NCBI GenBank assembly: GCA_964057225.1
Contig: OZ059894.1
Coordinates: 17,608,001 to 17,672,000, forward strand
DNA: 64,000 nt
Reading direction: 5' to 3'
Source of the DNA: Auanema rhodensis
Taxonomy: Eukaryota > Animalia > Nematoda
Shown here: positions 6,607 through 37,039 of the stretch, piece by piece
Layout: each line of letters starts with the position of its first letter
Numbering within the stretch: the first letter of the stretch is position 1
The notes under the pieces: generated by a model
Seen by the model: only the letters and a program-made list of their open reading frames with translations
What the model was told of the DNA's origin: nothing
The model's database searches: none
Translations under genes and position numbers: made by a program

Positions 6607-6690
6607 TTATCATGAAATAGGAAAGGTAAATTAATCTAAAAGATGATAAGCGTATCAACACTCTTAGAGTACTTCACGGGTGGTATATTA
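6607..6690 (+). promoter_or_regulatory. GATA (TGATAA) sites and TATA-like element upstream of lysozyme-like gene 1
   Basis: TTATCA at 6607-6612, TGATAA(G) at 6644-6650 and TATATTA at ~6684, all within 130 nt of the ATG. TGATAA is the nematode intestinal ELT-2 motif. Confidence 0.4.
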
Positions 6691-6732: not shown

Positions 6733-7881
6733 ATGAAGCTTCTTTTGATTGTAGCTTTTGCTCAAGTTGTTCTACATCATGCTGTTGCTGCTGCGGACGA
6801 AGTAAACTATATACCTTTTTCAGTATTAATTATTCATAAACTTTAATAATAATGTTTGCATTTCACGTGAACACGTGAAGATCGTAACAACAGTTATTTC
6901 TAAATTATGAAATAAGAAAATCGGTTGCATGAATTTCAAATCTAATTTTCATCTTTAATCTTCAGTAAATTGTTATTTCAGATAGCTACAGGATATATGT
7001 TTTCGGATATAAGTAGTGTTGAACGAGACGTTATGATTCTGGATAATATGTGTCTTTCATCCAATAATATCAAAGGAGTATTCTTGAAGTAATATTTGAT
7101 TTCTTATTCAAGATATAACTTTGATTTACAGTGTTTATAATTCTTCTAATAATGAATATAACGCTGGATACATAACTTCAATTTATAAATGTAAGATAAT
7201 ACTTTCAAATATAAATATTATAGTTAATAATAATTATATTTAAGCTATGAACGACATCTTTCTTCTTATTTCTCCAAGTATAACTAGTTACGATAAAACT
7301 GATTTATTCTCAAAAATTTATAAAACTTTATCTCCATATGGTTATACAACTAACTTTTTCTGGATTGACGTAAGAAAATCAGAAAAACAATATGGATAGT
7401 ATAAATTGAAATTTCAGCCACAGTATCTCAAAGGTGAAAATGATATGCAATTTATTCAAAACGTTGCTCAAGTTAGTATATCTGATTATCAAGTTTATAA
7501 CAAATATGTTTAGACAAGCAATGTTAAATTTGGAATTAAAACAACAACAGATTTCTGGTTAAATACAATGAATAATCTTGTAATTGACAATAATGTTCCT
7601 TTGTGGTATATTCTTATAAATATTTATAAAATATAATTTACCAATTTTAGGGTATCTGACTTGAAGTCATTTGATGATTACAAACCTATTGGTGGCTGGA
7701 AAGCTCCTGTTGTCATTTCTTCTGGCTATATCCAAGAGGATTGTCTCACAAAATCAGAGAAGAACAAATACGAAACGTAAGAATTGAATTTTAAATTAAA
7801 TTAATGTTATGTTTTAGTGTTCAATATAAGAGACAAGATATATTACCTTATGCTTTGGTTCCTGAGAACAAATCCACTTAG
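6733..7881 (+). CDS. Secreted GH25/protist-type lysozyme-like protein, single domain, 8 exons
   Basis: Signal peptide MKLLLIVAFAQVVLHHAVAA. The spliced frame reads GYMFSDISS...C...GVFLNVY...FFWID|PQY...FIQNVAQ|TSNVKFGIKTTTDFW...VPLW|VSDLKSFDDYKPIGGWKAPVV...C...*. WxD, GIxT...W, PLW and FxDFxxxGGWxxP are hallmarks of nematode LYS proteins. AATAAA at ~7945. Confidence 0.8.
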
Positions 7882-8899
7882 ATCATTAGTACTTCAATCA
7901 TCAGTTTCACCTCTGTATGTATCAAGTGAATGTACTATTTAAAGAATAAATATTCATGAATATTATTATTTCTTAGATTACAACATATTCTATCTATTTT
8001 TCCTATTTTTAGCAAAAAATATGTATCAAGTTTAACTGATTTACTAATTAAATATAAATTGGGATACTATACAGAAACATTTTTGAAAGCTCAATTTCTT
8101 TTGAATTTAAAATGTGTTTGTTAGGTTTGTAGGTTTCATGAACTAGACCGACTTTTCACAAACCTGAAATCCGAGGTTGTTATCTACACAGAGTTCATAT
8201 GAAACACGATCACCTATGTATCTGAACCCAATCCTCACATCGGTTCTTAACGACTTTGGATTGTTTTGTTGAATTATTTAAGTTAACTATCGGATGGGAT
8301 AGCTTGGGCTAAGCAGCTTGAAGCTGAATTGAAAACGGTTCCGTTATTCTGCAAAGCATTACAGGATAAGGTCCTCGAAAGTCAAGTGAGGATGGGCTTG
8401 GTTCATGTAAAAGTGATAATACTTGATAGCACGATCGAGAAGCAAGGCGCAAAAACAGAGTCAAAAGAAAACTTCAGAGATCATATTAAAGAATATTCAG
8501 ATACTGGCTTGGCTACTTGAGCTCAACTTACATCAAATAAGGAATGAAGAATCTATCGATATCGGAACGTCAAAACCAGTAAAAGAGAGAAAAAAGAAAA
8601 CAAAAATGACTCTTATGAATATGTAAAGTGCTAAATGAATTAGTATTTAGTCTAGAAAAAATATTTTATATTAATGAAATCAAACTCAGCATGGTATATC
8701 CTATTAGTTTTATTTTAAAATAATGATTCTTTATTCAGAATATTTGCTGATTTCCATGAACTAAATATATGGAGCTGGTACTCCAAGCGCTAACTGGGAA
8801 GAAGGTCTTTTCTTCATTATACCTTACCAGCGGGTTATCGAATATATATATTAAGAAACAGGACAGGAAAAAAACACGATTTTCAACTACTAGAAACGC

Positions 8900-9350
8900 T
8901 TACCAATCTTACGGTTTGGCATAACAAATTGGTTGGCAATCTTCCAACACATGGTGGATGTTATCTTGAATGCAATATTTCTAGCGGAAGACGGGTACAT
9001 TCATACTCAAATGATATGTGGAGAATAAGCAAGGGAAAGGAAGTCGAAAACTTAGAAACTCATTACCCCATAACTAACTTGAAATATAAACAAAAACTTG
9101 AGAGCTTCATAGTAAGGGTATAGATTGCAAACTAACAAGTCTTGTTCATTCATTGAAGAGCAGGAACTCAGAACCAGAAATGTGTGTGAAGAAGCTCTGA
9201 GTTTTATGATTATTGTATTACTCATGTCAAGGCTACTGTAAGAGAGTAGTTCCATGATATTATAAATATAAAATTAAGAAGAAGATTCATTTTGACTGCC
9301 GATGGAGCCGAAATATTCCAATATATCAAACCTCATGTACCTGGCGAGCT
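8900..9350 (+). mobile_element. Highly decayed non-LTR retrotransposon reverse-transcriptase fragment (tentative)
   Basis: Intronless, purine-rich stretch with broken frames. Pieces read ...HYPITNLKYKQKLESFIV... and ...IEEQELRTRNVCEEAL..., resembling the RT N-terminal blocks YRPITxLxxxYKL and EQxGxR..GCxE. It has many stops and frameshifts; the element may span ~8100-9520. Confidence 0.3.
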
Positions 9351-11108
9351 AGTAGAAAAAAAATGTATAAAACCCAAAAATTAACACGAAGACTCTCATA
9401 TTTGGAAAAGATGACAACAAGAAGTCCGGAGGCAGGAACGCTTTCGATAACAGTGTAGAAGAGAATGACTGAGAAAAGCTGAAGAGAGTTCAATAGTTCA
9501 GATCTGTAGGCGATTAGGTGATTTTATTGTTTTTCTTATCAAAAAGTATTTCAAAGACAACATTTTGTTTTATTAATATATTATATTATTGTCGGAGAAA
9601 CAATTAAATTTTGTGTCACAACATTACAATGCAAATTTTTCTTAAAAATATTTGTAAACATAACACAAAAAATGTTGTCAATATGATCCACAACCATTTC
9701 CATCATTAGTTTATGATGAAGAAGCCTTCTGAATTGAGGAGGTAAAAGGAGATCCAGTTTATAGATTATCAGGAGCGTTGTAACCGCTTCTGAGCCGCGA
9801 AATGGGTTAAACTTATAAGATTTTCTTAGTTTTCCCCACATAGTTTGGCTAGAACCAATCTCAGATAGAGAGATATTTTGCTCATCTTATTCTATTCCTA
9901 ATCAAAACGTTTCTATGATACTTCAGGCAAACCAACTTTTTTGGATTTTAGATGGAATGTTTTAAACGTAGTAGAGCAAGTTGAATATTGATTTTAAAAC
10001 ATTTTTTTTAGAAAGGAAATTTGTAAATTGAAGGGAAATGAGAGTTAAAGATTATTAAAAGAATAGTTTGGAAGTTTAAAATAAAGTTTAAATAAATAAT
10101 TTTTACTCAGTTTACTCTTATATAGTCTTGTTAGTATCATAGTTCTTGTTTCAACTAAACAGTTTTGTTTTTAATTTCACTAATTTCTATGTTTTTTTCT
10201 CTATAATCTTAACATATCTAACAACTGTTTATGAAATGTTCTTACATATTCTAATAGAGAAGGAAACAGATGAAAATCTGTTAATGCTAAATCAGAAGAG
10301 TAAGGTGAATGATCAAGAGTATTCCATGGAGTCTCTATGAATTTCTATTCTCTCTCGTTTTTCTACACAAACAATTCATATACAAGCATGGTGCTAGTGT
10401 ACACAAAGTTTACAAAACATACTATATGAATCAGATAAAATTGTCAAAAAATGTCTTAACGCCTTACAGAATATAAAATATGTTAAATTCTGTTAAATAC
10501 AAGAATAATTTGAGTAAATTTTCATTTCAAAATAACAAATCCTGAAATGATAAATGAAGGAAAAGCACGTTCTTTTACATTGCACATATCTAATCTGTTT
10601 CAGATTATACAATGAAATATATATTTTATTATCTGAGTTTTCTATAATAATACGTCAACAAGACTGTAGTAGATATTAAAAAATCAAAAATATAATCAGA
10701 AATTATTACAAATTTTATGTTTATGATCGATGCTCTCAAGAACTGAGTCTATGTTGGGTGTATGTGGTTTTTAGTTCAATTTCCTTGTTTGCTCTCAATC
10801 TCGTTGAGCCTCAAAGTTGTTGGGAAGATATACAAAAGTGCTATCAAAACCATTAAAAATGAAGTTTTGCCTATCTTTATTTCTGAAAATACGTGACAAC
10901 TTCAATACAAAATTTCTGTGGGTGAGATGAAACGTCATTTTAAATAAGCAATCATAAATCAATGACATCAATTTAGCTCAGATAAGACTTTTATGGATCA
11001 ACTTTGAAAAAGTTTGAGGATGTCTTTCATATATAAACACAAGCTGATCTTGAAGTAGTATCATACTCTCTTACATTTTATTTATTTTAATTATTTTAAG
11101 ACATCAAG

Positions 11109-12146
11109 ATGTTGAGAACTGTAGGACTTCTATGTCTAACAATTAGTTTTGCTATTTGTGCTCCAGTTGATGACTTGTCAGTTAAAGCTTTTGTTGTTGA
11201 TGCAACAGTTGATGTTAATATTGCTCCATCATTAGATTGTTTGAAGAATGAGAAATATCAAGTTGGATTCCTCAAGTAACTTCTTTTTTTTTTGATTTCA
11301 ACGTTCTTTTTCATTATTTCAGTATTTATGAAAATGATCATTTCGTTGATTCCAGTGCTAAATGGATTAAGCCAATGTCTAACCGTTCGTATCGATTTAG
11401 AAAATATAAATTTGAAATTTTGAATTTCAGAAGGTTTCAAGACTCAGTTCATAATTCGACCAAAATATGATTCATCTGAAGATGCTGCAGCTAATATTAT
11501 TAAATTGGTTAAAAATAGAATGTCATCAGCTTATAATACTGATGTGAAATTCCTTTGGTTAGATGTATGAAAGTGTTTTTTTTTGTTTTTTTAAACTTTA
11601 TTTTGAAGACTAAATACCTTTCTCAAAGCTCTTCTGCTAATATTAATTTCATTACTTCATTGGAATCTATGGGAAAAGTAAGTTTTAACATAAATTAATA
11701 TAATTTACATATTATAAAATAGGTTAACAAGATAAAACTTGGAATGATTACATCAAAATCCAATTGGGAAAGTTATGAAGGAGATTGGAACGGTCCAGCT
11801 GCTTATGATGAGCCTCTTTGGTATACATTTCGAATTTTATTTTTAATTTTATTCTGCTTAAACCTTTAATTATAATATTTTAAATTTTGATTTAAGGTGT
11901 ACTGATGCTGGAGTAACATCTAATTCATTTGTATCATTCGGTGATTGGAATTCACCTACCGTAATCAATGGAAAGTCTCAATCTACTTGTTTCACACGTG
12001 GAGGAGCCAAAATGACTGTCCCAGAGTAAGTTTTTATATTTTATTAAGAATTTTTTTTATAATAATATAAAATTTTTTAATTTAATTTAAAAGTTTTTTA
12101 TAAAAACTAATTTAGTGCCCTGTGTAAACGTTCTTTGATCGCTTAA
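11109..12146 (+). CDS. Secreted GH25/protist-type lysozyme-like protein, single domain, 7 coding exons
   Basis: Signal peptide MLRTVGLLCLTISFAICA. Spliced frame: AFVVDATVD...LDCLKNEKYQVGFLN-IYEND...QFIIRPKYDSSEDAAANII...FLWLD|TKY...NINFITSL...KLGMITSKSNW...DEPLW|CTD...FVSFGDWNSPTVING...TCF...ALCKRSLIA*. TATATAAA at 11030-11037, then a probable 5'-UTR intron at 11055-11100. AATAAA at ~12209. Confidence 0.82.
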
Positions 12147-13716
12147 AGAAGTATATGGTATCATCATTAACTGAAATACATTAATTATTTACTGTACTTC
12201 ATTATTAAAATAAAGTTATTAATCTATTTTATATTTTATATATAAATATATAATTATACAACTATTATAAAATATATAAAAATCTATTTTAATATAGATA
12301 ATCAATTTTAAATTGAAATCAACAAACAAATGTACTAGAGCCTATAATGCAAATATATTATTATATTATTAATCCTTTAACCTTTTATAATTTAAAGATA
12401 AAATATTTTAATTATAATATTAAATTTTAATTTTCATATAAATAGTTTAATATTTCAATAATTTCAATATTTTATGAAAACATTAAAGTTTTCTTATCAT
12501 TAAAATAGATTATTAATTATATATTAATCTTATATCGTATATCTTTTTTTGGAATGCTTTAGGGGGGAGGAGACAAACTATCAATGTACTACTAGATAAT
12601 TCATATTTTAGTTTTTTGTTTAAAATATTTTTTTTTATAAAAAATTTTTAAGCTTTTCTATTATTCTTTGTTAATCCATTTTAAATTTTATTTACTTTTT
12701 CAATTATATTTTTGTATATATATATATATATACTTCTATAATCCAATTAACATTATCAGATAGAATAATCTTCTGATTATGTAGTTGAATCAGCTAAAAA
12801 TTAAAAAGATGTATAAGCTATTCTATAAATAATATTTTTGGCCAATATTAAAAATGATCAAAGGACCGAAAAAGATCGTTAATTTGTTCTGAAATACAAA
12901 TAAAATCTATAAAATTTTAATTTATTTTAAAAGATTTTATTTGAAATATTAATAAATATATGTATGTATGTATGTATCATACAAAGATTATATAGAAAAA
13001 GTATTATTAATCCAATTTTCACTGCTTAAGTTTAAGATTTGGGTGGGGTTTTTATCAATAATAATATATCAATTTTTAATTCCTTTTAATATTGGTATCA
13101 GTGACTAAATGATAAGAAGGTTCATATAGAACGTCATTATATATTTTTTGAAATCTGATTAATCATTCGATAAGAATTATAAGAATTTAAAATTTTAATT
13201 GAAATAATCTAAGTTAAATATATTAAAACTTTTAACAGTTTTAATAAAAAATAATTAAAACAAAGTTATTTTTAAAGTTTTATGAAAAAAACTTTTTCAA
13301 AACTTTGTAAAACATTTAAAATACAAAAATGAAGATTAATTAATGAATAAACAGTACTTATATGACTTCTAATCTTCCAAGCGACTAGTTGTAAAGAAGG
13401 AAATATTTCAATATTCTGATGTAACAAAACAGATAAATCTGGGAAATTATTATAAATTTAGTATAAAAGTTTTTTTTTGATGATATTACTGAATAAAATA
13501 AATGATTCGAAATAAGATAAGGTTCGAAATATATCTTTATGTCTTCACAGGGGTGGATGATATCAAGAAACGTCATTATACGGTACATATATATAAATGA
13601 TTTTCGAGTTTGAAGATAGCATTATCGTCATTCTTTTTCTTTGATAATCTCCTTTTTACTTTTATATTTTTACATATTATTAATTAATTTAATTAATATA
13701 TATATATATAGAAACT

Positions 13717-16700
13717 ATGAAAACAATATTATTATTGTTTTTGTTTGTTGGTTTCACAACATTTGTACAACCAAATCCTGAAACTGGTACACAAAGATTG
13801 GTAAGATATTAATTATTTAAAAAAAAAAATAAATAAAAATATATTAAAGCAAGAAGATATTGGTAGAGGTTTTGTAGTTACTTCTGATGTTAAAGCTGAT
13901 CATATACCAAATGCTGTTGATTGTTTAGCAGATGACTATGACGGTGGATTTATATAGTTAATATTTAAATTTTTTAAAATTTAATTTATAACAAAATAAT
14001 TTCAGTGTTTATGAAAATAATACATTTCTTAATAATAGTATACAATGGATAGCAACAATGCAAAAAGATTATATTGGTATTTAAAATATTTAAAGAAAAT
14101 TGTATTTTAAATCTAAAAGTTTAGCTTATTCTATTCAATATGTAATAAAACCACGATATGATGCTTCTGCAGATGCTGCTACAAATATTATTGGAACTAT
14201 TATTAATAAGATTAAAATAGCAGCTAATGCTGATATTAAGCTTATTTGGGTTGATGTATGTGAACTAAATATATTTTTAAAATTAATTTTTTAAAATTTA
14301 TAGATTGGTTTCATTAATCAACAACAAGTAGCAGATAATGTTAATTTCTTATCAAAATTACAAACAGCTGCAACAACTAAGAATATCAAACTTGGAATCA
14401 TCACATCAAAATCTCAATGGAAAAATCAAACAAATGATTGGAGTGGTCCAGCTTTAAGCAATGATCCTCTTTGGTAATTATTTAGAAAATTAAATTTGTA
14501 AATATTCAAATTTAAATTTATAGGTTTACTGATAGGGATACTAGTTTCGGTGAATTTGTGCCAATGGCCGGTTGGCAATCAACAGCAGTTATCAATGGTG
14601 TTAATGCTCGAATGTGCTTTACTGAAAATGGTGATGTAAACTTCAGACAAGAGTAAATTAATTAATTTTCTTCAAAAACAATTAATTTTCAATTAATTTA
14701 GTGTTTTATACAAACGTTCAGTGATTAATACAGAAGGATCCACAGGAACACCAACAACTAATATACCAACAACAGTTCAAGATATGGTTAATATTTATTA
14801 TTATTATTATTTATATAAATAATAATATTATTTTAGGATAAATATAATTATGGTTATTCTGTTTATGCAAAATCAAATGCTTATTGGATTGCATTCAGAG
14901 ATGAATTAGAGTGTTATAAAACACAAGGAAAAGCTTTCTTCCTCTAGTAATTTGAAATTATTTTTTAAAAATTTTTTAAATTTTAACTTTAAGTATTTAT
15001 GATGGTGATGGTGTACTTGATCAAGTAATGCATTTACTTCCACTTATAATTAAAGGTTTGTTAATATTTCAGAAAAATTGTTTTTAAAAATTAAAAAATT
15101 TAGCTAAAATGGATATTCAAATAGTTATTATGCCACGTACAGTAGAACTGGCTGATAAGGTATACATCAAAGTTATGGAAGCATTTGATTCATATGGATT
15201 CAAACCAACTAGTATTTGGCTTGATGTAATGATATCATGTTATAAGTATAATTATATTAATTATATTAATTTCAGACATATTATTATTATTTTCAAAGTC
15301 CTGATATGAACATAGAGTTCTGTGAGACACTTAGTCAATTGTTTAGCGTATGTTTGATGAATTTTAAGTTTTTTCAAATTATTTTCTTATCATCATTACA
15401 GTTAAACGGAATTAAAATGAATTATATTACTAATACAAGAACATGGATTGAATATCTTGGAGATTGGCAATTACCGGCTCTTAATGGTTCCATTTTATGG
15501 TTATTACAAACTTTTCTTTTAAATAAAATACTTAAACTCAATATTTAGGGATGATCAAGAAATTTTAAAAGAACAAGAATTCAATGAATTCGGAGGATGG
15601 ACTGAAGTTTCAGCTTATACTACTTTCGAAGTGCGTACATGTCGTCAAAATGATGATCAATATCAGGCTAGAGTCTTACAGTATGTTTTACTTTTAACTT
15701 TTGAAAAACAAAATTATAATTTAAGAGTTATATATAAACCATATCGACTTGATTTCAATTATACATACAATCCTTCTACACCAATTCCATATATTACAAG
15801 TCCTGCACCAACATCTACTTCGAAATTACCTACTACTTCTACTACAAAAACACCTATTACTACACCAGCAGACGTATATATTCTAATATTTAAATATTTT
15901 TCTAAATATATTTTATTTTTAAGAAACAAGCATCAGGTGTATTAATTTCTGCTGATTCTCCTGTTGCTGTAACTACAACAGATCTTGCTAACTGTTTCAA
16001 AGCTGATGGAGATAGCGCAGTTTTCCTTTAGTATGTTCATTAACTATATTTATCTATTTAGTTTATATTATTTTAGTATTTATACTAACAATCAGGTCAA
16101 TACTATACTATCAAAGAATGCTTTTGATCTTCAAAATGGTAAATTTGTTTTATTTTTGTTTTAAAATATTTGAAAACAATTTATGTTTTAGCTGGATTCA
16201 ATGTTCAATTTATCATTCAACCAAGCTTTTTGGTAAATGCTACAGATGTTATTAACAATGTTACAACAACTTTAAATGAATTAAACTTATCTATTGATTA
16301 TTTGTGGATTGATGTATGTTTTTAAAATTATTTTTTATTTTAAAATATTAATTTTAGACTGCATTCATTTCTAATGATGTATCAGTAAATAAGATGTTCT
16401 TAGGTGATATTCTTATGGCTACTTTGGTATGTTTTCAATTATTTTTAATTCAATCTTTTAACATTTTTTTTTCTTTGAAAATTAAAAAAAAATCTAGTTT
16501 TTACTCCGAAAACATATAATTACAATTAAGTTCTTATAGAAGCAAAATATCACTGTTGGAATTCAAACATCCCAAATCCAATGGACATATGGTTTTGGTA
16601 ATTACGGAACTTTTTCCGCAATGGGGGCACTTCTTTGGTAAATATTTATTATAATTATATATATTATATTTCATATTTTAGGGATAGAAGTTCTCAAAGT

Positions 16701-17078
16701 TTTGGCAGCTTTAACTCATACGGTGGATGGTCAAGACCTACTGTATTAAGCTCAAATCTTTCACCAACATGCAGTTTTAATCAAATCAATATGATTTTAA
16801 CAAAGTATATTACTTGTTTTTCTTTTTTTTTATTTTATTTTTCTTTCAGAGTTTCATATCTAAGTGATTTCTTACGTTTTGTTCCTTTAACTACTGCCCA
16901 GCCTAATGTATCAAGTACTCCATCTACAGTTCCAACAACAAGTAATGTGACTTTACCAACTGGAGGATCAACAATGGGATCAACAACTACTAAAGTTCCA
17001 TTAACAACTTCAACAGCAGCTTCAAGCTTATTTTCATTGAGCATTTTTGTTTCAGCTTTATTGAGTGTCATGTCTTAA
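13717..17078 (+). CDS. Secreted, probably GPI-anchored protein with three tandem GH25 lysozyme-like domains and Thr/Ser-rich spacers, 21 exons
   Basis: Signal peptide MKTILLLFLFVGFTTFVQP. Domain 1 (~13850-14720): LIWVD, KLGIITSKSQW, DPLW, FVPMAGW. Linker GSTGTPTTNIPTT. Domain 2 (~14838-15745): SIWLD, YITNTRTW, ILW, FNEFGGW. Linker PSTPIPYITSPAPTSTSKLPTTSTTKTPITTP. Domain 3 (~15924-16880): YLWID, VGIQTSQIQW, LLW, FNSYGGWSRP. A Thr/Ser stalk and terminal hydrophobic tail follow (TSTAASSLFSLSIFVSALLSVMS*). All 20 GT-AG introns join in phase with no internal stop. AATAAA at ~17110. Confidence 0.85.
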
Positions 17079-17201
17079 ATATTATATGATAGTATATTAT
17101 AAAATTATAAATAAAATAAGGTCTCAATGAGGGTCATGTTTAACTTCCTAGTCTGAATATATATGATAATGCTTGAAGTTTATTCAGGCTTTTTCTAAAT
17201 T

Positions 17202-27100: not shown

Positions 27101-28026
27101 TATGTTTGAACTTTATTTCCAACATCAACAAGTACATTCAATGAATCAGTGCATGCTTCTTCCTCTATTTTTTTTTTGAAAATAAAGATGAACATGCAGA
27201 AGAAGCATCGTGTGTGCTTTGAACTCAAATTTTTTTTTTGGCGCATTGAACTCAAAAGTTCATCTTCTCAATCTATATAGTTCTGTTACTTTCGGACACT
27301 CATCCATTCTTCTTCTTTAGTCTTACACATCAAAAATAAGAAAACGATGCTTTAAGTCATACGAGACACCTGAGTTCCAACTGACCTGACCTGGCCTTCT
27401 CTTCCTTCTATCCCTTTAAGTTTGCTAGCTCGATTTCGGCAATTCCTTCGAAGAACAACACCAACTGTTCAATCAGATATGAAGAAAAAGTTTCAGAATT
27501 CCAATAAATTGACAATTTTTTGAAAAAATTAATAGAAACAATAAAAGATTTTTATATTAACTATATGTATAGATTAACTTTTTATTATTCATATTTTTGA
27601 AAATATTTTAACATACAGCAAATGATCATGTTTAGAAATTCGTATGAAGCTGAAAATTTATATTTTTTTTCTTTTTCGTCTTGTTTAAAATAAATATTTG
27701 TACATAAATCATAGTATATACTAATATATAGTTTATTCTTTCAAATATTATAATAAATGAAATGTTTTCTCAATCAATATTCTTATATTAAAAATTATTT
27801 TTTTTATTTCTTTCATTTTATTCTTAATTTTATTTTTATAGCTGAGAAATTATCTCACCGTCAGGAAGAAACAATAGTTTGTCAAAATCCTGACGGTTTT
27901 CAATCTGACTCATAAGATATCAGTAATCAATAACAACAACATCAACAACAACAGTCAACAAACAACATCATTCCCTCAAAAACAGTTTTAGGAACACGAG
28001 AGATTTTTGAATAATAGAACAACAAC

Positions 28027-28059
28027 ATGGAAAATCCTTTGATTGGAATTCCCTCTGAG
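28027..28059 (+). CDS. Candidate short coding first exon (MENPLIGIPSE); either a distal unc-70 start or exon 1 of a microprotein
   Basis: TTTATAG acceptor at ~27841, an A/C-rich leader, ACAACATGG start context and a GAG|GTAAAT phase-0 donor. It is in frame with both the 29243 and 39287 acceptors. Confidence 0.45.
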
Positions 28060-31000
28060 GTAAATTCACTTTACTTTTTACTTTTTGTTTCTCCACTCAT
28101 ACTGATCTATGTAGATGACCTTCTGATATTCGTGTGCCGACTGTCCGGTCGGCATCCTCATATCCTTAGTGGTCTGTATTATGTCCTATGAGAGCCTACA
28201 GATTTTTTTTGGAAACGAAAGTAAAAGGATCTTCTTCTCATATATATACTCATTTTTGAAATATCTATGTAGAGGTCATTAGAGAGAGAGAGAGAAAGAG
28301 GGAAAAAGACAAAGAGAGTAAGAGAGAAAGAGAGTACGAGAGAAAAATAATTTTGTGAATGGGGTGTGAGACTTAATCTTTAACTATTCATCTCAATTGA
28401 ATACTGTCTAATATTGTCATATACATCGTTGAATCACAACTGTTTCTCTCTTGCTCTCTTTCTCTTCCATCCTCCTCTCTCTATCTATATCTCTTCCTTT
28501 TATGCTCACTCACTCTTATCCCTTCAATCCGTCTTCCTCTTATCCTCTCTCTTCATTCAATCTCCTCGTTCGAGCTCGTTTCCCGCTTTATGCCTATCTT
28601 CTGATACCGCTATCCGGGCATTCTGTCCATTCCGGCTTTCTTTACATCCGCTAATCTCTCTTACCCTCATACTGGCTCAACCTCCCCGATCTCTCTCTCT
28701 CTATATCTCTCTTTCTCTCTCGCTCTCTTTTTTTCCTCTCTCTGTCTATGAATCAATCTAGCAACCCATATATTCCACTGGGCTTCATCAATCTATGCAT
28801 CTCTGCATGACTCATGTGTCGATATTCGGAAATGAATCCAAAAAAATTTAATCTACTGAAGCTCTTCATGAAATAAATTCTTTTCTTATCCTATTTACCA
28901 GTCCCTCCATCCTCACTCAATGTTGTCATGAAAAAGGTTCTTCATGTTACTAAACTATTTTTACTTATATTTCTATTTATTCAAACATTAGTTCGCTCTG
29001 TCCAAACATCACACATTTCAACTTTTCTTTCATTTTCTCATGCTCAACCCTATTTTCAATTACTCAACGGATTTAAAACGCTGTAGTCGTTTCAATTTTC
29101 CGTGTATGTTCATGAACTAGCATACGCCTCCTATCTATAACTGAATTACAAATTATTTTTTTGTTGAATTTGTTTTGATTTCGTACCATTACATGCTTTT
29201 CTCACTTTCCCCTAATATTTTGATCTTCAACCTGCTTTACAGCAGGAAGAGGTTGAAGAGAAAATCGAAATATCTCCAGAAATTCTGAGAAGCAAAAACC
29301 ATTCGCTTCGTGCATCCGTCTGTATACTTGACTTTGTTTGCGAGTTTTGTGCCGAAATCGCACTGACTGAGCCGGTTTCCCAACGACAACGACGGCAACG
29401 ACCAGGACGTCGACAACAGAAATAGTGATTGCCGTGGTTGTCAACCACGTCGTCACTTCGCATTCTCCTCCTTCTAATATCGAAAATTGCTTTTAACACA
29501 CTTCAACTAAACACATTGTCCATCATCAAGCACTAACATTGAAAGGAAAAAAAACTGATGAATGTACTAAACTTTCATTTCATTCCTTCTTTGTTCTTCC
29601 AAAATTCAAATCTAACAAACACTTGCTCTTCCTTTCTATTTCCTTCCGTACAATCGTCATCATTGCTAGATCGTCTGATGACTTCTAATCGTCAGTTTGA
29701 AATTCTTTTAGTCGTCTCACTCATTTTAGCTGCTTTATGTATTTCCTTCGTGGGTTTTCTATTCCTCATCCTCTGCTTCTTCTATTTCCCTTAATTCAGT
29801 CTACTTTGGTCTCAGTTTCCTTTTCCTTTCTTTCGACAATGCAATCGGTTAAAACAACATACATATATCTTTTTTTCAAAAAAATATATATTTTTTATAT
29901 AAAAATAGTAAATGTTTTCATATAATTATAATAATTAAGAAATATAATCATTCTAAATCCTCATAAAGTTATTTCATATACATAGTATATGATATGTATT
30001 TACGTATCAATCACTAACTTACCATTTGTCTTAATTCCTAAATTTTTATAATTTTTTCTTTATCAAACTTATATATTTTTAAATTCTACTTAAGCATATT
30101 CAATTCATTTATAGCTTATGTTTGTAAATCATAACATATACATCATATAACTAACTATAACTAACTATATGTATATATTATTATAAATACAATTTTATCT
30201 TTCTTTTATAACTTTTTTTTCCAAATTTTGATTTCTATTTAAAACATTAAAAATCTAGTTTTTAGTATATATATACTACATACTATATGTATATTATATA
30301 CGTATAATTTATATTATTTGGGATTTTTCAAACGTAAATTACTGTCAAATTCAATTAGATTCTGTTCAATTCATTCGCTTTCAATTTGAAATTGGATTCA
30401 AAAATTATTTTTTTTCACTATTATTGATTATCAGTTATTTTACTGTAATTCTTTTGTATATAATGCTTAATTTGCATAATTTTACGTGAAACACGTGAAT
30501 GTTTATTAAATCTTTCGTTTACATTCTTGAGAATAGTTATCATATTGAAGTACTTGTATAGCTTCTCGCAAAGTTGCAGAAATCTGTAGCTTTTTCCCAT
30601 AGATGAAATAGCCAAATGAGATAGTTAGAACAAGTAAGAGACATTGAGAAAAGAACGAAGCTTTTACCATATTTGATTACTACCCATCTAAGCTATCCCT
30701 TCGTCGTTGAGTAAATTAACTTCTCTATGACTATTTAGCTAAACCTATTTCCAAACCATCTTACTTATTATCATCTTTTACTCTTTCACTATCTTTTTGC
30801 CCAACTTGTTTTTAGTCATTTTTACTTTGTTTTCAATAAATTAACTGTTTTAGGAAACAGTTAGAAACCTACTTTTTTGAAACTTTTTACCCACATTTAA
30901 AGTTTTACATGTTCTTTCTTGTTACATCTTCATTACTTTGAAATGGAGAACTCTGACGGATAGACAAACTTCTCAACTTCACAGTCATTTTCATCGTTTT

Positions 31001-31496
31001 GTCTCTCCTATTCAGACTCATCTCTCATCTCAGGCTTCCTGCGGTAGGAAAACGTGCCAAGGTCGTAAAAATCGAAACGTTTTCCTTCAAACTAACGTCG
31101 TTATCGAACAAGTAGCCCCAGACATTTGTCATTTTCGTCAACCAAAAAGTTGTCATCAATGTTAATTTCCATATTCTAGCTTTTCCTATTGCCATAGTCA
31201 AATTTTCATTTATTATACTTTATTTTTTGCAATTTTTGAACATATTTATCTTAATATCATATAATGTTCTTTACTTAATCTATAATATTTAAAGTTGTAT
31301 AGTTAAAAATTCAAAATTTATATTCAATTTATTCGTTTTATTATCATAAATGATCTTTATGAAATGAAGTCATGCCATTCATTAGTCATCTAACAACGTT
31401 CTTCTGCTTTGCATCATCTTATTTGGAACACAAATTTATTTTCTACAAATATAATTTTGTTTTTGAAATTTTAGATTATATGTATATATACTCTTA

Positions 31497-31530
<34 letters not shown>

Positions 31531-32467
31531 TTATATTCTTATTTATATTTTATATATTCTTATTTAACTATATCATTAGTTATAATATTCATATTCTTAA
31601 TTTATATCTTATTTTTTCTTCTTATTATTAATACTGCTGAGAGATTCATGTAATAGTTTAAACACCCTTAAATGGAACCAGCAGTACAATGTCATCCCAA
31701 TGGCACCAATGATGTCGTCGTCGTCGACGTCTATTTATTGATTGCGACCTCTATGTCCGGCCAGAAGATGACGCGCCTCGTTTATTATTGCCGATGGTTG
31801 GTATAGGATTGGCTTGGGCTCTACTCCTCTTCTTTCTCTCTTTTTTACTTCCACTTTCGTTTCCGTTTTCTTTTCTCTCTATCCTCCTGTATGACATTCT
31901 TTCATATGGATATACTTTGTTCAGTTTCACTTACTGCTCCCTTTCTTCCTTCAGCTTTTCATTATTTTTTTGGAATTGTTAATTATTTTCTTTTCATTGT
32001 AAAGTCATTTTTCTTTATTTTATTCATTTTTATAATCTTTTACTATTTCTATATTTTATGAAAAGAAATATATACATACATATACTATATATAAGGTCAT
32101 TTCTCTAAAATCTTTTAAAAATTAATTATTTTTAAAGTTTTTATTAAGTTTATTAGAATCAAAATTTTAAATTAAACAACATATGTAGTTGTATGTATGT
32201 ATGTATATACTATACTTTTTTATTATTGCATTTCATAGTTATCCTCATAGGTGAGTTATTTTAGTTTTTTTTCCTGTTTTCCTCTTTAACCAAATATATT
32301 TATTTCTGGAAGTATTAATATTACTATATATATTGAGTATATCTCTATTTCATTATTGATTTAATTGATTTTTATTTGTTTCGTATGACAACTGAAACTC
32401 TTTTTTTCTTGTTAATATGGGAACAGTTAATTTTCAATGCATTGATATTGGCATTTCTCTCTTTCTT

Positions 32468-32506
<39 letters not shown>

Positions 32507-35500
32507 GTCTCTTCTGACTCAATTCTAGCGTTGGACACCTATCTATACTTCTCATGTACACACACACACATATAGGTCTCCATGTCAGTTTTCTATATTT
32601 AAATTTCTTTCGATACCTTCAACATGAATTGATTTTCTATTCTATTGGTTATTCCGTTCAAAAATGTTTTTTTTTCTCAACTGATTGACCTTTCTTTTCA
32701 ATTCTCATTGTTCTATTGCTCTCGTCTGACATCAGTTTGAAACATTTGGTCTGAAAGCGATGTAAGCCATCTGTTTTATATGACTATAATAGACCTACGA
32801 TGTTTAAATTTTATAAATACATATAGTAATGTATAACATATTGTTATGTGTAATTTCTTTTTTTTTTGAATTTTTGCAATTTTGCCGACCTTTTTCTGTC
32901 CATTCTCAATATTGAGAGGTTTCATACGCCTTGTTGCCCATGCATGGTCCTTTCTTTTGTATTTTCAGCGTAAATGTCTAGATTCCAGTTCTGAGCTGAG
33001 TTTTCTATCGAGTTTCTTTCGTTTTAATTTTTTTAAACCTTTGACTGTGTCATCATTTCCTTTCGAGAAAGTCCTCTATCTTTTTTGCGTGATCTTCTTG
33101 TATGGGACCATAGGCCAAGCGCGGACTTCTTTACTTTTATCCAAAATTTCTGGTCTTTTAGCTGTCCAGCTGTGTGAGGAGATAGCCAAAATAATAGGAA
33201 AACGACATAGATTATATGGTGAGAATAGAAGAGAGGGAGGTAAATTGTGAAGGCATATATAACAGTTATAAAGTATGAAAAGAAGAGAGAGAGAGAGAGA
33301 GAGAGAAAAAGAGAGAGAGTATGAAAGTAACAGAGAAGAAAGAGAAAACCTTGGATTACTCATTGTCAACATGACTCAACTGTTTCCTCTTCGCCTTGTA
33401 CACGTATAAAGTGTGTGTAGGTCCTAACAATCTTTTTTTTATATGTATATCTTCCATATTTGTCTTCATCTCTTTTGTCAAATATTAATCGAATTCTGGA
33501 TTTTTTGTTGCCTTTGTATAGTCATGTATAATATTATACTAAACTATATGGCATTTGCTAGTTTTCTCTAAAACATCTTCCATCATAGCATTAACGATGA
33601 GCAACGCTCAGCCCACTCTTTCCCGTTTTCGCCGTTCGTTCTGTGTGTCAAATCGTTTCTAATGTTCTTGTAAACTGCCAGCTTAGTTTTTCCTTTCTCA
33701 TTCTCTAATTCTCTTCTCCTATTAGACTCTATATTCATTTTTTGTAAATCTCCTCCAAGTTTTTGTATCCACTTCTCCGTTATACCATCGTCTTAAAACA
33801 AAGTTGTCGAGTTGGATACTTATGTATCGGTCATATCCGTCTCCTTCATCAAACTTATTGAGAGCTACGATGGCAAGAGAGAGAGAGAGAAAACTCAGAT
33901 GATCTATGACAACGGCATCAGTTTCACTTGTCCTCATTGCATACATTATGATCTTGTTCGATTACATGTTCACTCCATTTTAAACTCACAACTTGCTGTA
34001 TTAGATTTTGTTTTATTTTCGTTGATTGCAGAGAATATTCAAATAGCCAATGTTCACACAAATTGTTTTTTCTACTTTTTTTTGCCTGAGGGTTTGTTGG
34101 TTGAAAGTGCATAAGAAAAAAATGAGTCGTATATGAGAGAAATAGTGTTGATATAATGGAGTTTATGAAGAAAAATATTGGAAATAGATGGAGGAAGGGT
34201 GGTGGACAACGAGGAGTTAAGAACCGAAGATGTATGAAAAGACTATGAATGAAAGAGAGGCAAAAGCAATAGCCTAAAGCGAAAAAAGAGGGAAAGAACG
34301 CATTCAGTCAGTGTACGAGACAGGAAAAAGGGCTGGAAGCTTTAGGGGGGAGGGGAGAGAAATCGATTTTCTGCCGCTGGCGTGCTGAATGAGAAGAGAA
34401 TGCTATAATAGAGAAGGAGCAAGGGTAGGGGGTGAGACGAGCCGTAAGACAGAGAAAGCTTGGTCTAGCTTTTTCTAGCGCTTTTCTCATCTCTCTCTAG
34501 CCTTCATTATCTCTAGTTCCCTCTCTTTGGTTATAGCAACTGAATGGCCGGCTAGTTGGCTTTGAGCTCCGGCGATCAGAGAAAGCTTGGCTTCAACAGG
34601 CTATGAGATGAAGAAAAGAAAACGAGGAAGAGGAGAATCAGATAAGCGAGAGGAAAAGAGAGTGAGTGGGTCTCGCTTGGCAAGCCGCGGCTGCTACGCT
34701 ACTGCTGTCGCTTCTTCTTCTTCTTCGGTTTCTGCTGGTAATCTGCTAGCCACTGGTCTCACATCAGCACATCAGTTGCGGAACAGACTTCTGTCCCTTA
34801 TTCCTCTATTCGTTTTCGAGATATTTCTTTTCTCTTTTTATTCCCTTCTTCTCCCTCTCTCTCTCCCTCTCTTTCTCTCTCTCTCTCATCTTTTTCTTTA
34901 ACAATTTTCTCTTTTAAATTTTTCTTTTCTTTTACTTTTTTCGTTCAGCTAATTTTCTGTTTGATGACGATATTTAACTTGCGTTATCATTTTGTTTTAT
35001 TGTATACAGAATTTCTATTCAATCTCTTTGCTTTTTATCTTTTCTTCCATTTTCTCATTTGCCGACTGATCAGGTTGTTGGTTTCTCTGTGCCTCTTTCC
35101 AACTTTGCTCGCTCATCTTCTTCTGTTACTTCGTTGTATTACATGCTTTATTGATTCTTCCATATTATGGTTTTGAAGGTTGTTTTTGATAGCCAAATGA
35201 TTGAATATGAAACTATTACCAGCAGCTTAAGCAATCCATACACATGTCCTACTAACTAGGATTATTGGCCCAGACGACATTACTAACGGTCTGTGTGTCA
35301 GTGACTCTGCTGCCATCTGGCTGCTGATGGTCCTGATGTATAGGCCTGACAACATCCTTCTCTCCGTCCTCTATTTTCTGCATCTCTCTCTCTCTCTCTA
35401 TTTCTTTCTCCCTCTCATCCACTTAATCTCAACATCTCTCATTATTCTATTCTTCTGTTGCTATCTCACTTGCCCTTATTTCAATCGTCCAGTAGAATGT

Positions 35501-36964
35501 CGCCTGCCCTTCGTATTTTCTCAGAAATTTGCCGGAATTACTGTCCTGTTGACTGCTATCTATTCTAATTAGACGAGCTGTCTGTCGTAATGTCGTTGTC
35601 ATACCGCGTTTTCATCATTAGCCCATGCCCGTCATCATCACCATCTTCCTTTTTGTTCAGCCAGTCACCGTCATTTTCGTTTACCTTCTAGCTGCATGTA
35701 TCTTGCCTCCGTGTGCTTGATTTCATGAACCTGCTGTTCCTGCTGTCCTTTTTCTTCTCCGTTGTTATCCGTTTAGATATTCATGTATCGTTTGACTGTT
35801 CAATCGCGTTTTTCTTCCGTAGCCGTCTTACGAGCCTAGGTCGCCTCATTCAAGCTGCTGGTCATTTAAATGATGTCGTTATATGTCATCCATGTTAACC
35901 AGCTTTCTGGATATCTCTATAAACGCAATTGACACCCCCCCCCACTGCAATCCTACGAGAGACGAGCGATATTCGAATCTACGGGAAGCATTGATTTTGC
36001 TACAAACACTTAGATTCTTCTTTTGTTTTGTTTTTTCTAAAAACTTGAAACTCAAATTTTATTGTTTGTAGCTAACATTACAGCTGACTTTTTATAATAG
36101 CTTTATAGAGAATTTGTTTTTATATGCATTTCATACTTCAAATTTCAAATCTCCTTTTATTTCTCTGAATAAATGGTCAGTTATTAAGAATTCTCCTAGG
36201 CATAATCCTACAATATTCTCAAGATTCTGATAGAATTAAGAGACAAAAATAGAGTTTTTTGGTGAAGCCTCTATATCTCTTAACTCGAAAAATGACCAAT
36301 GACCCACATAGCCTAATGCCCTTCCGAGGTTCAAGCCATAGAAGGACAGAGACCAGCTAGTCTTTTACTGCAACAACTACCAATCGTTGATGTGGATCGA
36401 TTCTTCTTGTGTGTCTTGTAGTCTCTCTCTTTTCCTCTCTCTTACCCTCCCCAATAGCAGATAGAATGGGCATAAGCTCCGTCTCTGTGTCTATCCAGCT
36501 TGCTGTTCGTTCCTTCTTCAAACACAAGCTGTATAAGGCAATATGATCAAATTGAACCATCGCTTTCATTACCTTAACGATGTAACTTCTTTCTTTTCGC
36601 TTTACTATTCTTAACCTGCTTTTTCCTTTTCCCAATAGTATTCTCGGTTCTATTTATTTCTTTCAAATTGCTTTCAAAGCCATATATGTATTTTGAAATG
36701 TTCTATTGAAGTTGTTACTCTTCTTGAAAGCTTCCTCTTCTGAACAACTGTAAAACTAGTATGTATTGAGCTTTTAATCATTTTTCAAGTGTTTTGTAAT
36801 CAAATTCACAGCTGAAATCGGGTACATAGACACTTTTTTTCATATTTTAAAGCATAGACTAAGCAATCTAGTTCTATTATTCTCTATTATATTGTATTCT
36901 ATCAACGCTTATTAGGTCTTCATCACCTCGTTTTTACACCTATCCCTTCCTTTACTTCCTCCCA

Positions 36965-36977
36965 CTCTCTCTCTATC

Positions 36978-37036
<59 letters not shown>
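36965..37036 (+). repeat. Compound (CT)n/(CTAT) microsatellite
   Basis: Directly visible. Similar CT tracts lie at ~3272-3312 and ~32460-32506; GA tracts lie at ~33283-33318 and ~41361-41428. Confidence 0.9.

Positions 37037-37039
<3 letters not shown>

What the first reader, a model, noticed from the sequence alone, without database searches (positions are those of the whole stretch)
13717..17078. Membrane-tethered triple GH25 lysozyme-like protein on a mucin-like stalk
Seen: 21 exons splice into one frame encoding a signal peptide, three divergent lysozyme-like domains separated by Thr/Pro/Ser spacers, a Thr/Ser stalk and a terminal hydrophobic tail with small residues (STAASS) at a plausible omega site. 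Known: nematode protist-type lysozymes (C. elegans LYS-1 to -10, GH25) are single-domain soluble gut proteins. I know of no three-domain GPI-anchored member. Inference: a multivalent peptidoglycan/glycan-binding array displayed on a cell surface, probably the gut brush border. It would act as a bacterial trap, pattern-recognition or colonisation receptor rather than a secreted enzyme.
Basis: partly seen in the sequence, partly recalled or inferred. Interest (0 to 1): 0.85.

Follow-up and report, generated by a model that had tools for sequence, protein, structure and literature searches.

The report
Tethered triple dead-lysozyme-like nematode protein
A nematode gene of 21 small exons encodes a secreted protein with three old copies of a lysozyme-like (GH25-like) domain that lack the key catalytic glutamate. 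Sugar-rich spacers join the copies and a greasy tail fit for a lipid anchor ends the protein, so it looks like a surface-displayed binder of bacterial wall sugars, not an enzyme; this is not yet proven.

Summary
Window 13717-17078 (+) splices through 20 GT-AG introns into one 776-aa frame. It encodes a signal peptide, three mutually homologous ~205-aa domains (23-28% identity, E 1e-11 to 1e-17), Thr/Ser/Pro linkers, a 48-aa stalk and a 16-aa hydrophobic C-terminus. Domains 2 and 3 have no start codon or signal peptide of their own, and the ~48-nt introns leave no room for one.

Four small RNA-type runs hold 45-46% of the locus's 31-mers, against 49% expected for fully spliced mRNA.

The GH25 label is supported only modestly. 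Exon-level Pfam and PDB searches found nothing. A self-built profile of 25-33 bacterial and phage GH25 domains aligns collinearly with the family over ~200 columns (hhalign P 0.001-0.003; 0 of 300 shuffles reach the score). In that alignment the DXE aspartate is kept in all five domains of the cluster, while the glutamate is G/Y/A/K/Q.

The fold, the GPI anchor, binding and gut location are untested.

This scan had already noted the missing glutamate (s1-378981).

Verdict: a real gene, probably a membrane-tethered array of catalytically dead lysozyme-like domains, and a new variant of a known kind.

The parts
13717..17078 (+). Whole coding region, 21 exons, 776 aa. Exons: 13717-13800, 13850-13956, 14006-14076, 14125-14255, 14304-14473, 14524-14652, 14702-14786, 14837-14946, 14994-15055, 15104-15225, 15276-15347, 15402-15499, 15549-15680, 15726-15873, 15924-16030, 16077-16138, 16192-16313, 16358-16426, 16540-16637, 16682-16804, 16850-17078
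   Evidence: all introns GT-AG, frame open; exon GC 0.323 against intron 0.120; 0 of 2000 shuffles stay open
13717..13800 (+). Exon 1: signal-peptide-like N-terminus (28 aa, hydrophobic core at residues 3-17)
   Evidence: KD 2.45. No signal-peptide predictor was available, so this rests on inspection
13850..14652 (+). Domain 1 (exons 2-6), GH25-like. Closest to paralogue parA (40% identity, E 1e-52). The motif W-V-D-I-G lies where GH25 has L-D-x-E
14702..14786 (+). Exon 7: end of the domain-1 unit. It is homologous to the last exon of the single-domain paralogues but has no stop. It runs into linker 1 (20 aa, 50% T+S+P)
14837..15680 (+). Domain 2 (exons 8-13), the most divergent copy. Motif W-L-D-T-Y. 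No Met or signal peptide of its own
15726..15873 (+). Exon 14: end of the domain-2 unit plus linker 2 (35 aa, 69% T+S+P)
15924..16804 (+). Domain 3 (exons 15-20). Motif W-I-D-T-A. No Met or signal peptide of its own
16850..17027 (+). Exon 21, first part: end of the domain-3 unit and a 48-aa Thr/Ser/Pro stalk (62% T+S+P) that ends in S-T-A-A-S-S
17028..17078 (+). Last 16 codons (hydrophobic tail, KD 2.09, no residue after it) and the stop. A candidate GPI-attachment signal, or else a C-terminal membrane helix
   Evidence: No GPI predictor was run
17110..17115 (+). AATAAA, 32 nt after the stop
13642..13647 (+). TGATAA (GATA-factor-like site) 75 nt upstream of the ATG. Similar sites lie upstream of both paralogues
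   Evidence: 5 WGATAAR sites in 900 nt of the three promoters, against 1.1 expected
11109..12146 (+). parA: single-domain secreted paralogue, 7 exons, 229 aa, same intron phases. Motif W-L-D-T-K
6733..7881 (+). parB: single-domain secreted paralogue, 8 exons, 231 aa, same intron phases. Motif W-I-D-P-Q. It gives the best single match to the GH25 profile

Best explanation
This is one real nematode gene. Its product enters the secretory pathway through an N-terminal signal peptide. It carries three anciently duplicated GH25-like (protist-type lysozyme-like) domains in a row, each probably held by one disulfide. Thr/Ser/Pro spacers separate the domains and a 48-aa stalk of the same kind follows; both are likely to be O-glycosylated. 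The protein ends in a 16-residue hydrophobic peptide after small residues, which is most simply read as a GPI-attachment signal.

Each unit equals a whole single-domain paralogue minus its signal peptide and stop codon. The gene therefore arose by tandem duplication and in-frame fusion within a local three-gene cluster.

All five domains of the cluster keep the aspartate of the GH25 DXE motif but have G, Y, A, K or Q at the glutamate position. They are therefore most likely not muramidases. The inferred action is that three glycan-binding grooves, held out from the apical membrane on a mucin-like stalk, bind peptidoglycan or a related glycan multivalently without cutting it. The membrane is probably that of the gut.

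Shown here: the gene structure, the repeat homology, the linkers, both termini, and the loss of the glutamate in the alignment. Modestly supported: kinship with GH25. Inferred only: the fold, the GPI anchor, the tissue, the ligand and the biological role.
For: Gene and frame.

Internal homology and shared intron phases with two single-domain paralogues. Domains 2 and 3 lack a Met or signal peptide, and the flanking introns are only 44-54 nt.

Expression: four small RNA-type runs each hold 0.45-0.46 of the sampled 31-mers, against 0.49 expected if every exon is present and spliced.

GH25 kinship:
- hhalign of the five-domain alignment against 25 GH25 domains scored 27.7, P 0.0028, over 200 collinear columns. 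Against 33 domains it scored 29.8, P 0.0013.
- Controls scored at most 17.5 in 100 column shuffles and at most 21.3 in 200 segment shuffles; the reversed alignment scored 15.0.
- hmmsearch gave parB 10.6 bits, reached by 1 of 3000 shuffles; D1 4.7 bits, reached by 35 of 3000; and parA 6.7 bits on an earlier profile, reached by 4 of 2000.
- The ESM Atlas look-up of exon 5 put 75 of its 100 nearest clusters in the set that carries PF01183, though only 11-14% of the members of the top clusters carry it.

Catalytic motif: Asp is kept and Glu replaced in all five domains. The DXE pair is the catalytic motif of GH25 (PMC7954357).

Termini, linkers, 12 N-X-S/T sequons and two conserved Cys per domain. 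GATA-like promoter sites.
Against: - No curated model recognises the domain: per-exon Pfam scans gave nothing and PDB sequence searches gave nothing.
- hhalign probability is only 11-18%, and domains 2 and 3 alone do not match the GH25 profile.
- Two of three Atlas look-ups returned no family, and the third scored only 0.72, which that tool calls a lead.
- No fold prediction was possible, because the tools take proteins by reference only and a spliced product has no reference.
- The GPI signal was judged by eye. The spacer between the small residues and the hydrophobic run is short, so a plain C-terminal membrane helix is possible.
- No junction reads were seen.
- Loss of the Glu rests on an alignment of modest significance.
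Confidence: 0.45

Rival explanations
1. It is an active, membrane-tethered digestive or defensive muramidase. The three GH25-like barrels would still cut peptidoglycan, using the retained Asp and some other acidic residue, and the tether would keep the enzyme at the gut surface.
For: The DXE Asp is kept in all five domains. The domain family is under enough constraint to keep two Cys, the W-x-D motif, L-W and G-W. Nematode protist-type lysozymes are gut-expressed defence or digestion genes (PMC3169628 and PMC2383907). GATA-like sites lie upstream.
Against: The Glu of DXE is replaced by five different, mostly non-acidic residues (G, Y, A, K, Q). That pattern looks like relaxed constraint at this position and not a conserved alternative. 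The column aligned with the first-strand Asp of GH25 is V/S/L/V/M. Both DXE residues are described as catalytic in GH25 structures (PMC7954357).
Confidence: 0.15
2. The domain is not a functional glycan-binding lysozyme relative. It would be a lineage-specific alpha/beta domain, of GH25 descent or only resembling it, used as a building block of a glycoprotein coat (gut glycocalyx, cuticle surface coat or eggshell layer). In that case the mucin-like parts matter most.
For: No close relative of exon 5 was found among 1.84 billion representative proteins or in JGI metagenome contigs. GH25 similarity is weak (hhalign probability 11-18%). The domains diverge fast (20-28% identity between copies). 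There are long T/S/P stretches and 12 N-glycosylation sequons.
Against: The collinear match to GH25 is far beyond the shuffles. It places the family's own invariant residues (Asp of W-x-D, L-W, G-W) on GH25's conserved strand ends. Two soluble single-domain paralogues exist without any mucin part.
Confidence: 0.2
3. The single 776-aa product is partly an artefact of modelling. The locus would mainly give shorter products, for example a soluble one-domain protein when intron 7 is retained, and the three-domain tethered form would be rare or absent.
For: No junction reads were examined. Retaining intron 7 gives a stop after 12 codons, and intron 20 can be read through in frame. Exon 7 is homologous to the terminal exon of the paralogues.
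Against: Domains 2 and 3 have no start codon or signal peptide. All 20 introns have canonical ends and the local modal length. The share of 31-mers held by four RNA-type runs (0.45-0.46) needs nearly all 21 exons to be present without introns. One domain alone would give about 0.16.
Confidence: 0.1

Closest known systems
Nematode protist-type (Entamoeba-type) lysozymes, C. elegans LYS-1 to LYS-10 (GH25)
   Same: They are nematode secreted proteins with one lysozyme-like domain of about 200 aa and belong to locally duplicated gene families (PMC2383907, PMC3169628). The two upstream paralogues have this single-domain secreted layout.
   Different: Here three domains are fused in one chain with mucin-like spacers and a membrane-anchoring tail. 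The DXE glutamate is absent in every copy. Direct comparison with LYS sequences could not be run, because none could be obtained by reference. Exon 5 found no relative in the protein library, which includes UniRef and NCBI.
GH25 muramidases (Cellosyl, Cpl-1, fungal GH25; Pfam PF01183)
   Same: The profile match is collinear over about 200 columns. The family's conserved strand-end residues fall on those of GH25 (L-D of strand 4, the strand-5 G-x-x-T/Y, L-W of strand 6, W-Q of strand 7). The spacing of predicted strands is similar (crude).
   Different: The DXE Glu is missing, and the first-strand Asp column is hydrophobic or Ser. Pfam did not report PF01183 for any exon. Known GH25 enzymes carry cell-wall-binding modules (choline-binding, LysM, SH3), not tandem catalytic-type domains on a lipid anchor.
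Catalytically dead hydrolase folds reused as glycan binders or receptors (chitinase-like lectins of GH18; non-amidase PGRPs such as membrane-bound PGRP-LC). From general knowledge, not tested here
   Same: The logic is the same: a hydrolase fold keeps its substrate groove, loses a catalytic residue and acts as a lectin or pattern-recognition module, sometimes tethered to a membrane.
   Different: The folds and lineages differ. No binding or signalling has been shown for this protein. It has no cytoplasmic part, so any signalling would need a partner.
GPI-anchored mucin-stalk surface proteins
   Same: It has a signal peptide, globular head domains, a Thr/Ser/Pro stalk, small residues, and then a hydrophobic C-terminal peptide with no cytoplasmic residues.
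   Different: The anchor is not predicted by a trained tool or shown experimentally. The spacer before the hydrophobic run is short.

Membership tests
GH25 glycoside hydrolases (Pfam PF01183) | Significant sequence match to a GH25 family profile | tested here: inconclusive
   Pfam on single exons found no hit; the whole spliced domain could not be submitted. A self-built GH25 profile (25-33 phage and plasmid domains, with PF01183 confirmed for 9 of them) gave: hhalign P 0.0028 then 0.0013 with probability 11-18%; 0 of 300 shuffles reached the score; hmmsearch parB 10.6 bits, reached by 1 of 3000 shuffles; D2 and D3 not significant.
GH25 glycoside hydrolases (Pfam PF01183) | [quoted passage not shown] | not testable with these tools
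   Structure prediction and fold search take a protein by reference, and a product spliced from 6 exons has none. Only a crude Chou-Fasman strand spacing resembles GH25.
GH25 glycoside hydrolases (Pfam PF01183) | Catalytic DXE motif at the end of strand 4 | tested here: not met
   Asp is kept in all five domains. The Glu position holds G (D1), Y (D2), A (D3), K (parA) and Q (parB). The register is supported by the HMM and hhalign alignments.
GH25 glycoside hydrolases (Pfam PF01183) | Muramidase activity | not testable with these tools
   Needs a lysis or peptidoglycan-cleavage assay.
Nematode protist-type lysozymes (LYS family) | Demonstrable homology to C. elegans LYS proteins | not tested
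   No LYS sequence could be obtained. The phmmer search with exon 5 against 1.84 billion representatives found only 3 spurious repeat proteins.
Nematode protist-type lysozymes (LYS family) | Single-domain secreted protein | tested here: not met
   This gene has three domains and a membrane-type tail. The neighbours parA and parB do fit this layout.
GPI-anchored proteins | N-terminal signal peptide plus a C-terminal hydrophobic peptide with no cytoplasmic residues | tested here: met
   N-terminal core KD 2.45. The last 16 residues have KD 2.09 and end the protein.
GPI-anchored proteins | Omega site with small residues at omega and omega+2, a polar spacer, and a positive call by a trained predictor | tested here: inconclusive
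   Small residues (S-T-A-A-S-S) directly precede the hydrophobic run, but the spacer is short. No NetGPI, PredGPI or big-PI was available.
Mucin-like O-glycosylated stalk proteins | Extended Thr/Ser/Pro-rich, low-complexity segments | tested here: met
   Linkers of 20, 35 and 48 aa with 50%, 69% and 62% T+S+P. Glycosylation itself was not tested.

The most novel reading that the evidence does not exclude
The protein is a lipid-anchored, trivalent peptidoglycan-recognition receptor or bacterial tether on the nematode gut surface. It would be built from lysozyme domains that lost catalysis: a functional counterpart of PGRP-type receptors, made from a GH25 fold, in a phylum in which (from general knowledge, not checked here) PGRPs are not known. 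The two soluble single-domain paralogues would act as decoys or opsonins.
Probability: 0.2. Interest if true: 0.8.

Novelty: new variant of a known kind. Interest (0 to 1): 0.55.

Why it matters
How nematodes sense or handle bacterial cell walls is poorly understood, because they lack several classical pattern-recognition families. A surface-displayed array of catalytically dead lysozyme domains would be a concrete candidate for peptidoglycan recognition, for holding bacteria at the gut wall, or for shaping colonisation.

It would also be a clean example of enzyme-to-lectin conversion followed by domain multiplication. The history is visible in one locus: two soluble single-domain genes next to a fused three-domain tethered gene with identical intron phases.

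If the domains instead prove active, it would be the first brush-border-type tethered GH25 enzyme. Either outcome can be tested with simple expression, lysis and pull-down assays.

Tried and rejected
1. Pfam on 20 single exons: nothing. The exons are too short.
2. PDB sequence searches with exon 5 and with two exon-class profiles: only chance hits.
3. phmmer of exon 5 against 1.84 billion representatives: three spurious repeat proteins. The genome and its close kin seem absent from that collection; the best hit of the spectrin gene next door is only 87-88% identical.
4. The search for homologous proteins with Cpl-1 and with a 9-sequence GH25 profile: only Firmicute and phage GH25, with no eukaryotic LYS. 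Both were of little use.
5. tblastn of exon 5 against phages: no match.
6. hhalign against Cpl-1 alone and against 9 or 13 narrow GH25 sequences: not significant. The signal appeared only after the template was widened with 12 and then 20 plasmid-borne GH25 domains.
7. An attempt to assemble a full-length profile from exon pieces on a scaffold with MAFFT: the pieces stacked on each other, so this was abandoned.
8. A synteny walk from the spectrin gene on a related nematode's Logan contig: no lysozyme-like gene there, and that genome has 45% GC.
9. JGI metagenome scan: no relative.
11. Structure prediction, whole-domain Pfam or HHpred and GPI predictors were left out, because a spliced protein has no reference and long letters may not be typed.
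12. A retroelement reading of ORFs at 8.3-9.1 kb: no family found, so dropped.
Full report
**The sequence and the gene model**

The window is AT-rich (GC 0.19-0.45). The stretch 13717-17078 was read directly and spliced in a script. It gives 21 exons and 20 introns, all GT...AG. Nineteen introns are 44-54 nt and one is 113 nt. The open frame is 2331 nt, or 776 aa, from ATG 13717 to TAA 17076-17078.

This is not chance. Exon GC is 0.323 against 0.120 in the introns. GC at codon positions 1/2/3 is 0.40/0.40/0.17. About 59 stops would be expected in 776 random codons of this composition, and 0 of 2000 shuffles stay open. AATAAA lies 32 nt after the stop.

**Repeat architecture**

The product has, in order:
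- a signal-peptide-like start (hydrophobic core, KD 2.45);
- three units of about 205 aa;
- two Thr/Ser/Pro linkers (20 aa at 50% T+S+P, and 35 aa at 69%);
- a 48-aa stalk (62% T+S+P) ending in S-T-A-A-S-S;
- a 16-aa hydrophobic end (KD 2.09) with no residue after it.

There are 12 N-X-S/T sequons.

The three units are homologous to each other (E 1e-14 to 1e-18; 23-28% identity). Each has two conserved cysteines near its two ends.

Two single-domain genes with signal peptides lie upstream on the same strand: parB at 6733-7881 and parA at 11109-12146. All five domains share the same intron positions and phases. Domain 1 alone has lost one intron.

Exons 7, 14 and 21 are homologous to the last exon of the paralogues, but exons 7 and 14 carry no stop and splice onward. 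Domain 1 is much closer to parA (40% identity, E 1e-52) than to domains 2 and 3. The three-domain gene is therefore an old in-frame fusion of tandem duplicates. Domains 2 and 3 have no Met or signal peptide, and the neighbouring introns are too short to hide one. Three separate genes is not a workable reading.

**Expression**

The look-up of sequencing runs listed four small runs of one organism, guessed to be RNA, each holding 0.45-0.46 of the sampled 31-mers of 13650-17150. If every exon is present and every intron removed, 0.49 of the words are exon-internal. One domain alone would give about 0.16 and genomic DNA about 1. This fits a fully spliced, fairly abundant mRNA.

The first 8 bases of exon 2 fall inside that stretch and were handled only in local scripts.

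**What the domain is**

Exon-sized queries are too short for curated libraries. Pfam gave nothing and PDB sequence searches gave nothing.

phmmer of the longest exon (56 aa) against 1.84 billion representative proteins gave only three spurious repeat proteins. The neighbouring beta-spectrin-like gene finds at best 87-88% identical nematode fragments. This genome and its close relatives therefore appear to be missing from that collection.

A language-model look-up of exon 5 put 75 of its 100 nearest clusters in the set that carries PF01183 (GH25), and 16 more in the set that carries PF08924. Only 11-14% of the members of the top clusters carry PF01183, and the top score of 0.72 is a lead only. 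Two other exons gave no family.

I then built my own GH25 template. With Cpl-1 alone, or with 9-13 phage and Firmicute domains, hhalign saw nothing. One paralogue gave a collinear HMM alignment from strand 1 to strand 5 at 6.7 bits, reached by 4 of 2000 shuffles.

After 12 and then 20 plasmid-borne GH25 domains from Nostoc, Streptomyces, rhizobia, Pseudomonas, Bacillus and Clostridium were added, the signal grew:

| Test | Result |
|---|---|
| hhalign, 25-domain template | score 27.7, P 0.0028, 200 collinear columns |
| hhalign, 33-domain template | score 29.8, P 0.0013, probability 18% |
| Control: 100 column shuffles | maximum 17.5 |
| Control: 200 shuffles of 12-column segments | maximum 21.3 |
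| Control: reversed alignment | 15.0 |
| hmmsearch, parB | 10.6 bits, reached by 1 of 3000 shuffles |
| hmmsearch, D1 | 4.7 bits, reached by 35 of 3000 shuffles |
| hmmsearch, parA | 3.8 bits, reached by 59 of 3000 shuffles |
| hmmsearch, D2 and D3 | not significant |

The alignments put the family's own invariant residues on GH25's conserved strand ends:
- W-x-D on L-D of DXE;
- the K-x-G-I-x-T run on the strand-5 G-Y-x-x-x-x-Y;
- P-L-W on L-W-x-A-x-Y;
- G-W(-Q) on W-Q-Y.

A crude propensity plot gives similar strand spacing in both families. I read this as real but modest support for GH25 descent, with a probability of about 0.75. The fold itself could not be predicted, because a spliced protein has no reference in these tools.

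**Catalytic residues**

GH25 enzymes use the DXE pair at the end of strand 4 (PMC7954357). In the five-domain alignment the Asp is invariant. The Glu position is G, Y, A, K and Q in D1, D2, D3, parA and parB. The HMM and hhalign registers agree.

The column aligned with the first-strand Asp is V/S/L/V/M, though an Asp lies a few residues downstream of it in four of the five domains, so that site is uncertain.

Five different, mostly non-acidic replacements at the Glu position argue for loss of muramidase chemistry across the whole cluster.

**Likely mechanism**

- Shown: a secretory signal, three homologous extracellular-type domains, spacers of mucin-like composition, and a terminal hydrophobic peptide without a cytoplasmic tail.
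- Inferred: GPI attachment at the small-residue patch; O-glycosylated rigid spacers; and three non-catalytic GH25 grooves that bind peptidoglycan or a related glycan multivalently at a cell surface.
- Tissue: GATA-factor-like sites upstream of all three genes hint at gut expression (5 WGATAAR in 900 nt against 1.1 expected). This is a weak hint.

Rivals are an active tethered muramidase, a structural coat glycoprotein with no specific ligand, and alternative shorter isoforms. Retaining intron 7 would give a stop after 12 codons.

**Comparison and novelty**

Caenorhabditis protist-type lysozymes are treated in the papers consulted as ordinary lysozyme genes in large, locally duplicated families (PMC2383907, PMC3169628). 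That they are single-domain secreted proteins is general knowledge, not checked here. The two upstream paralogues fit that layout.

I found no paper on tandem GH25 domains, dead GH25 lectins or GPI-anchored lysozyme-like proteins in nematodes. I found no relative in JGI metagenome contigs. I could not search nematode proteomes for the architecture.

Conversion of hydrolase folds into lectins or receptors is a known theme (chitinase-like lectins and non-amidase PGRPs, from general knowledge). This is therefore a new variant of a known kind, not a new category.

**Verdict**

Interest is moderate. The finding gives a directly testable candidate for bacterial-wall recognition at a nematode surface, but its central functional claims are still inference.

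Noticed in passing
window 6733-7881 and 11109-12146 (+): Two single-domain secreted paralogues (parB 231 aa, parA 229 aa) lie upstream on the same strand, with the same intron phases as each unit of the triple gene. Together they form a three-gene cluster. parA is 40% identical to domain 1.
   Followed up: yes
window 13642-13647, 10980-10986, 6644-6650: GATA-factor-like sites (TGATAA or WGATAAR) lie 75-130 nt upstream of the start codons of all three genes. There are 5 WGATAAR in 900 nt against 1.1 expected from the window. This is a possible sign of gut expression.
   Followed up: partly
window 14787-14836 (intron 7) and 16805-16849 (intron 20): Retaining intron 7 would end the protein 12 codons later, giving a soluble one-domain form. 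Intron 20 is 45 nt with no in-frame stop, so retaining it would add 15 residues (ORF 16635-17078). Whether either happens is unknown.
   Followed up: no
window 16427-16539: Intron 18 is 113 nt, about twice the otherwise very uniform intron length of 44-54 nt, and contains long A and T runs.
   Followed up: no
window about 40375-48833 (+): A beta-spectrin-like gene (calponin-homology domain at 42265-42543, long spectrin-repeat exons) has much higher GC (0.41-0.46) than its surroundings. Its best database hits are 87-88% identical fragments from other nematodes, so the source species seems absent from the protein collection.
   Followed up: partly
window about 28000-39500: A stretch with strong strand asymmetry (GC skew to -0.28, AT skew to -0.25) has ORFs made of Ser/Leu/Phe-rich low-complexity translations, which suggests pyrimidine-rich simple sequence. 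No RNA family matched 17100-64000.
   Followed up: no
window 8000-10700: The spacer between parB and parA is GC-richer (0.33) and holds several 50-90-aa ORFs. No Pfam family was found for four of them, and their nature is unknown.
   Followed up: partly
They cover intron 1 and the first 8 bases of exon 2.
   Followed up: no
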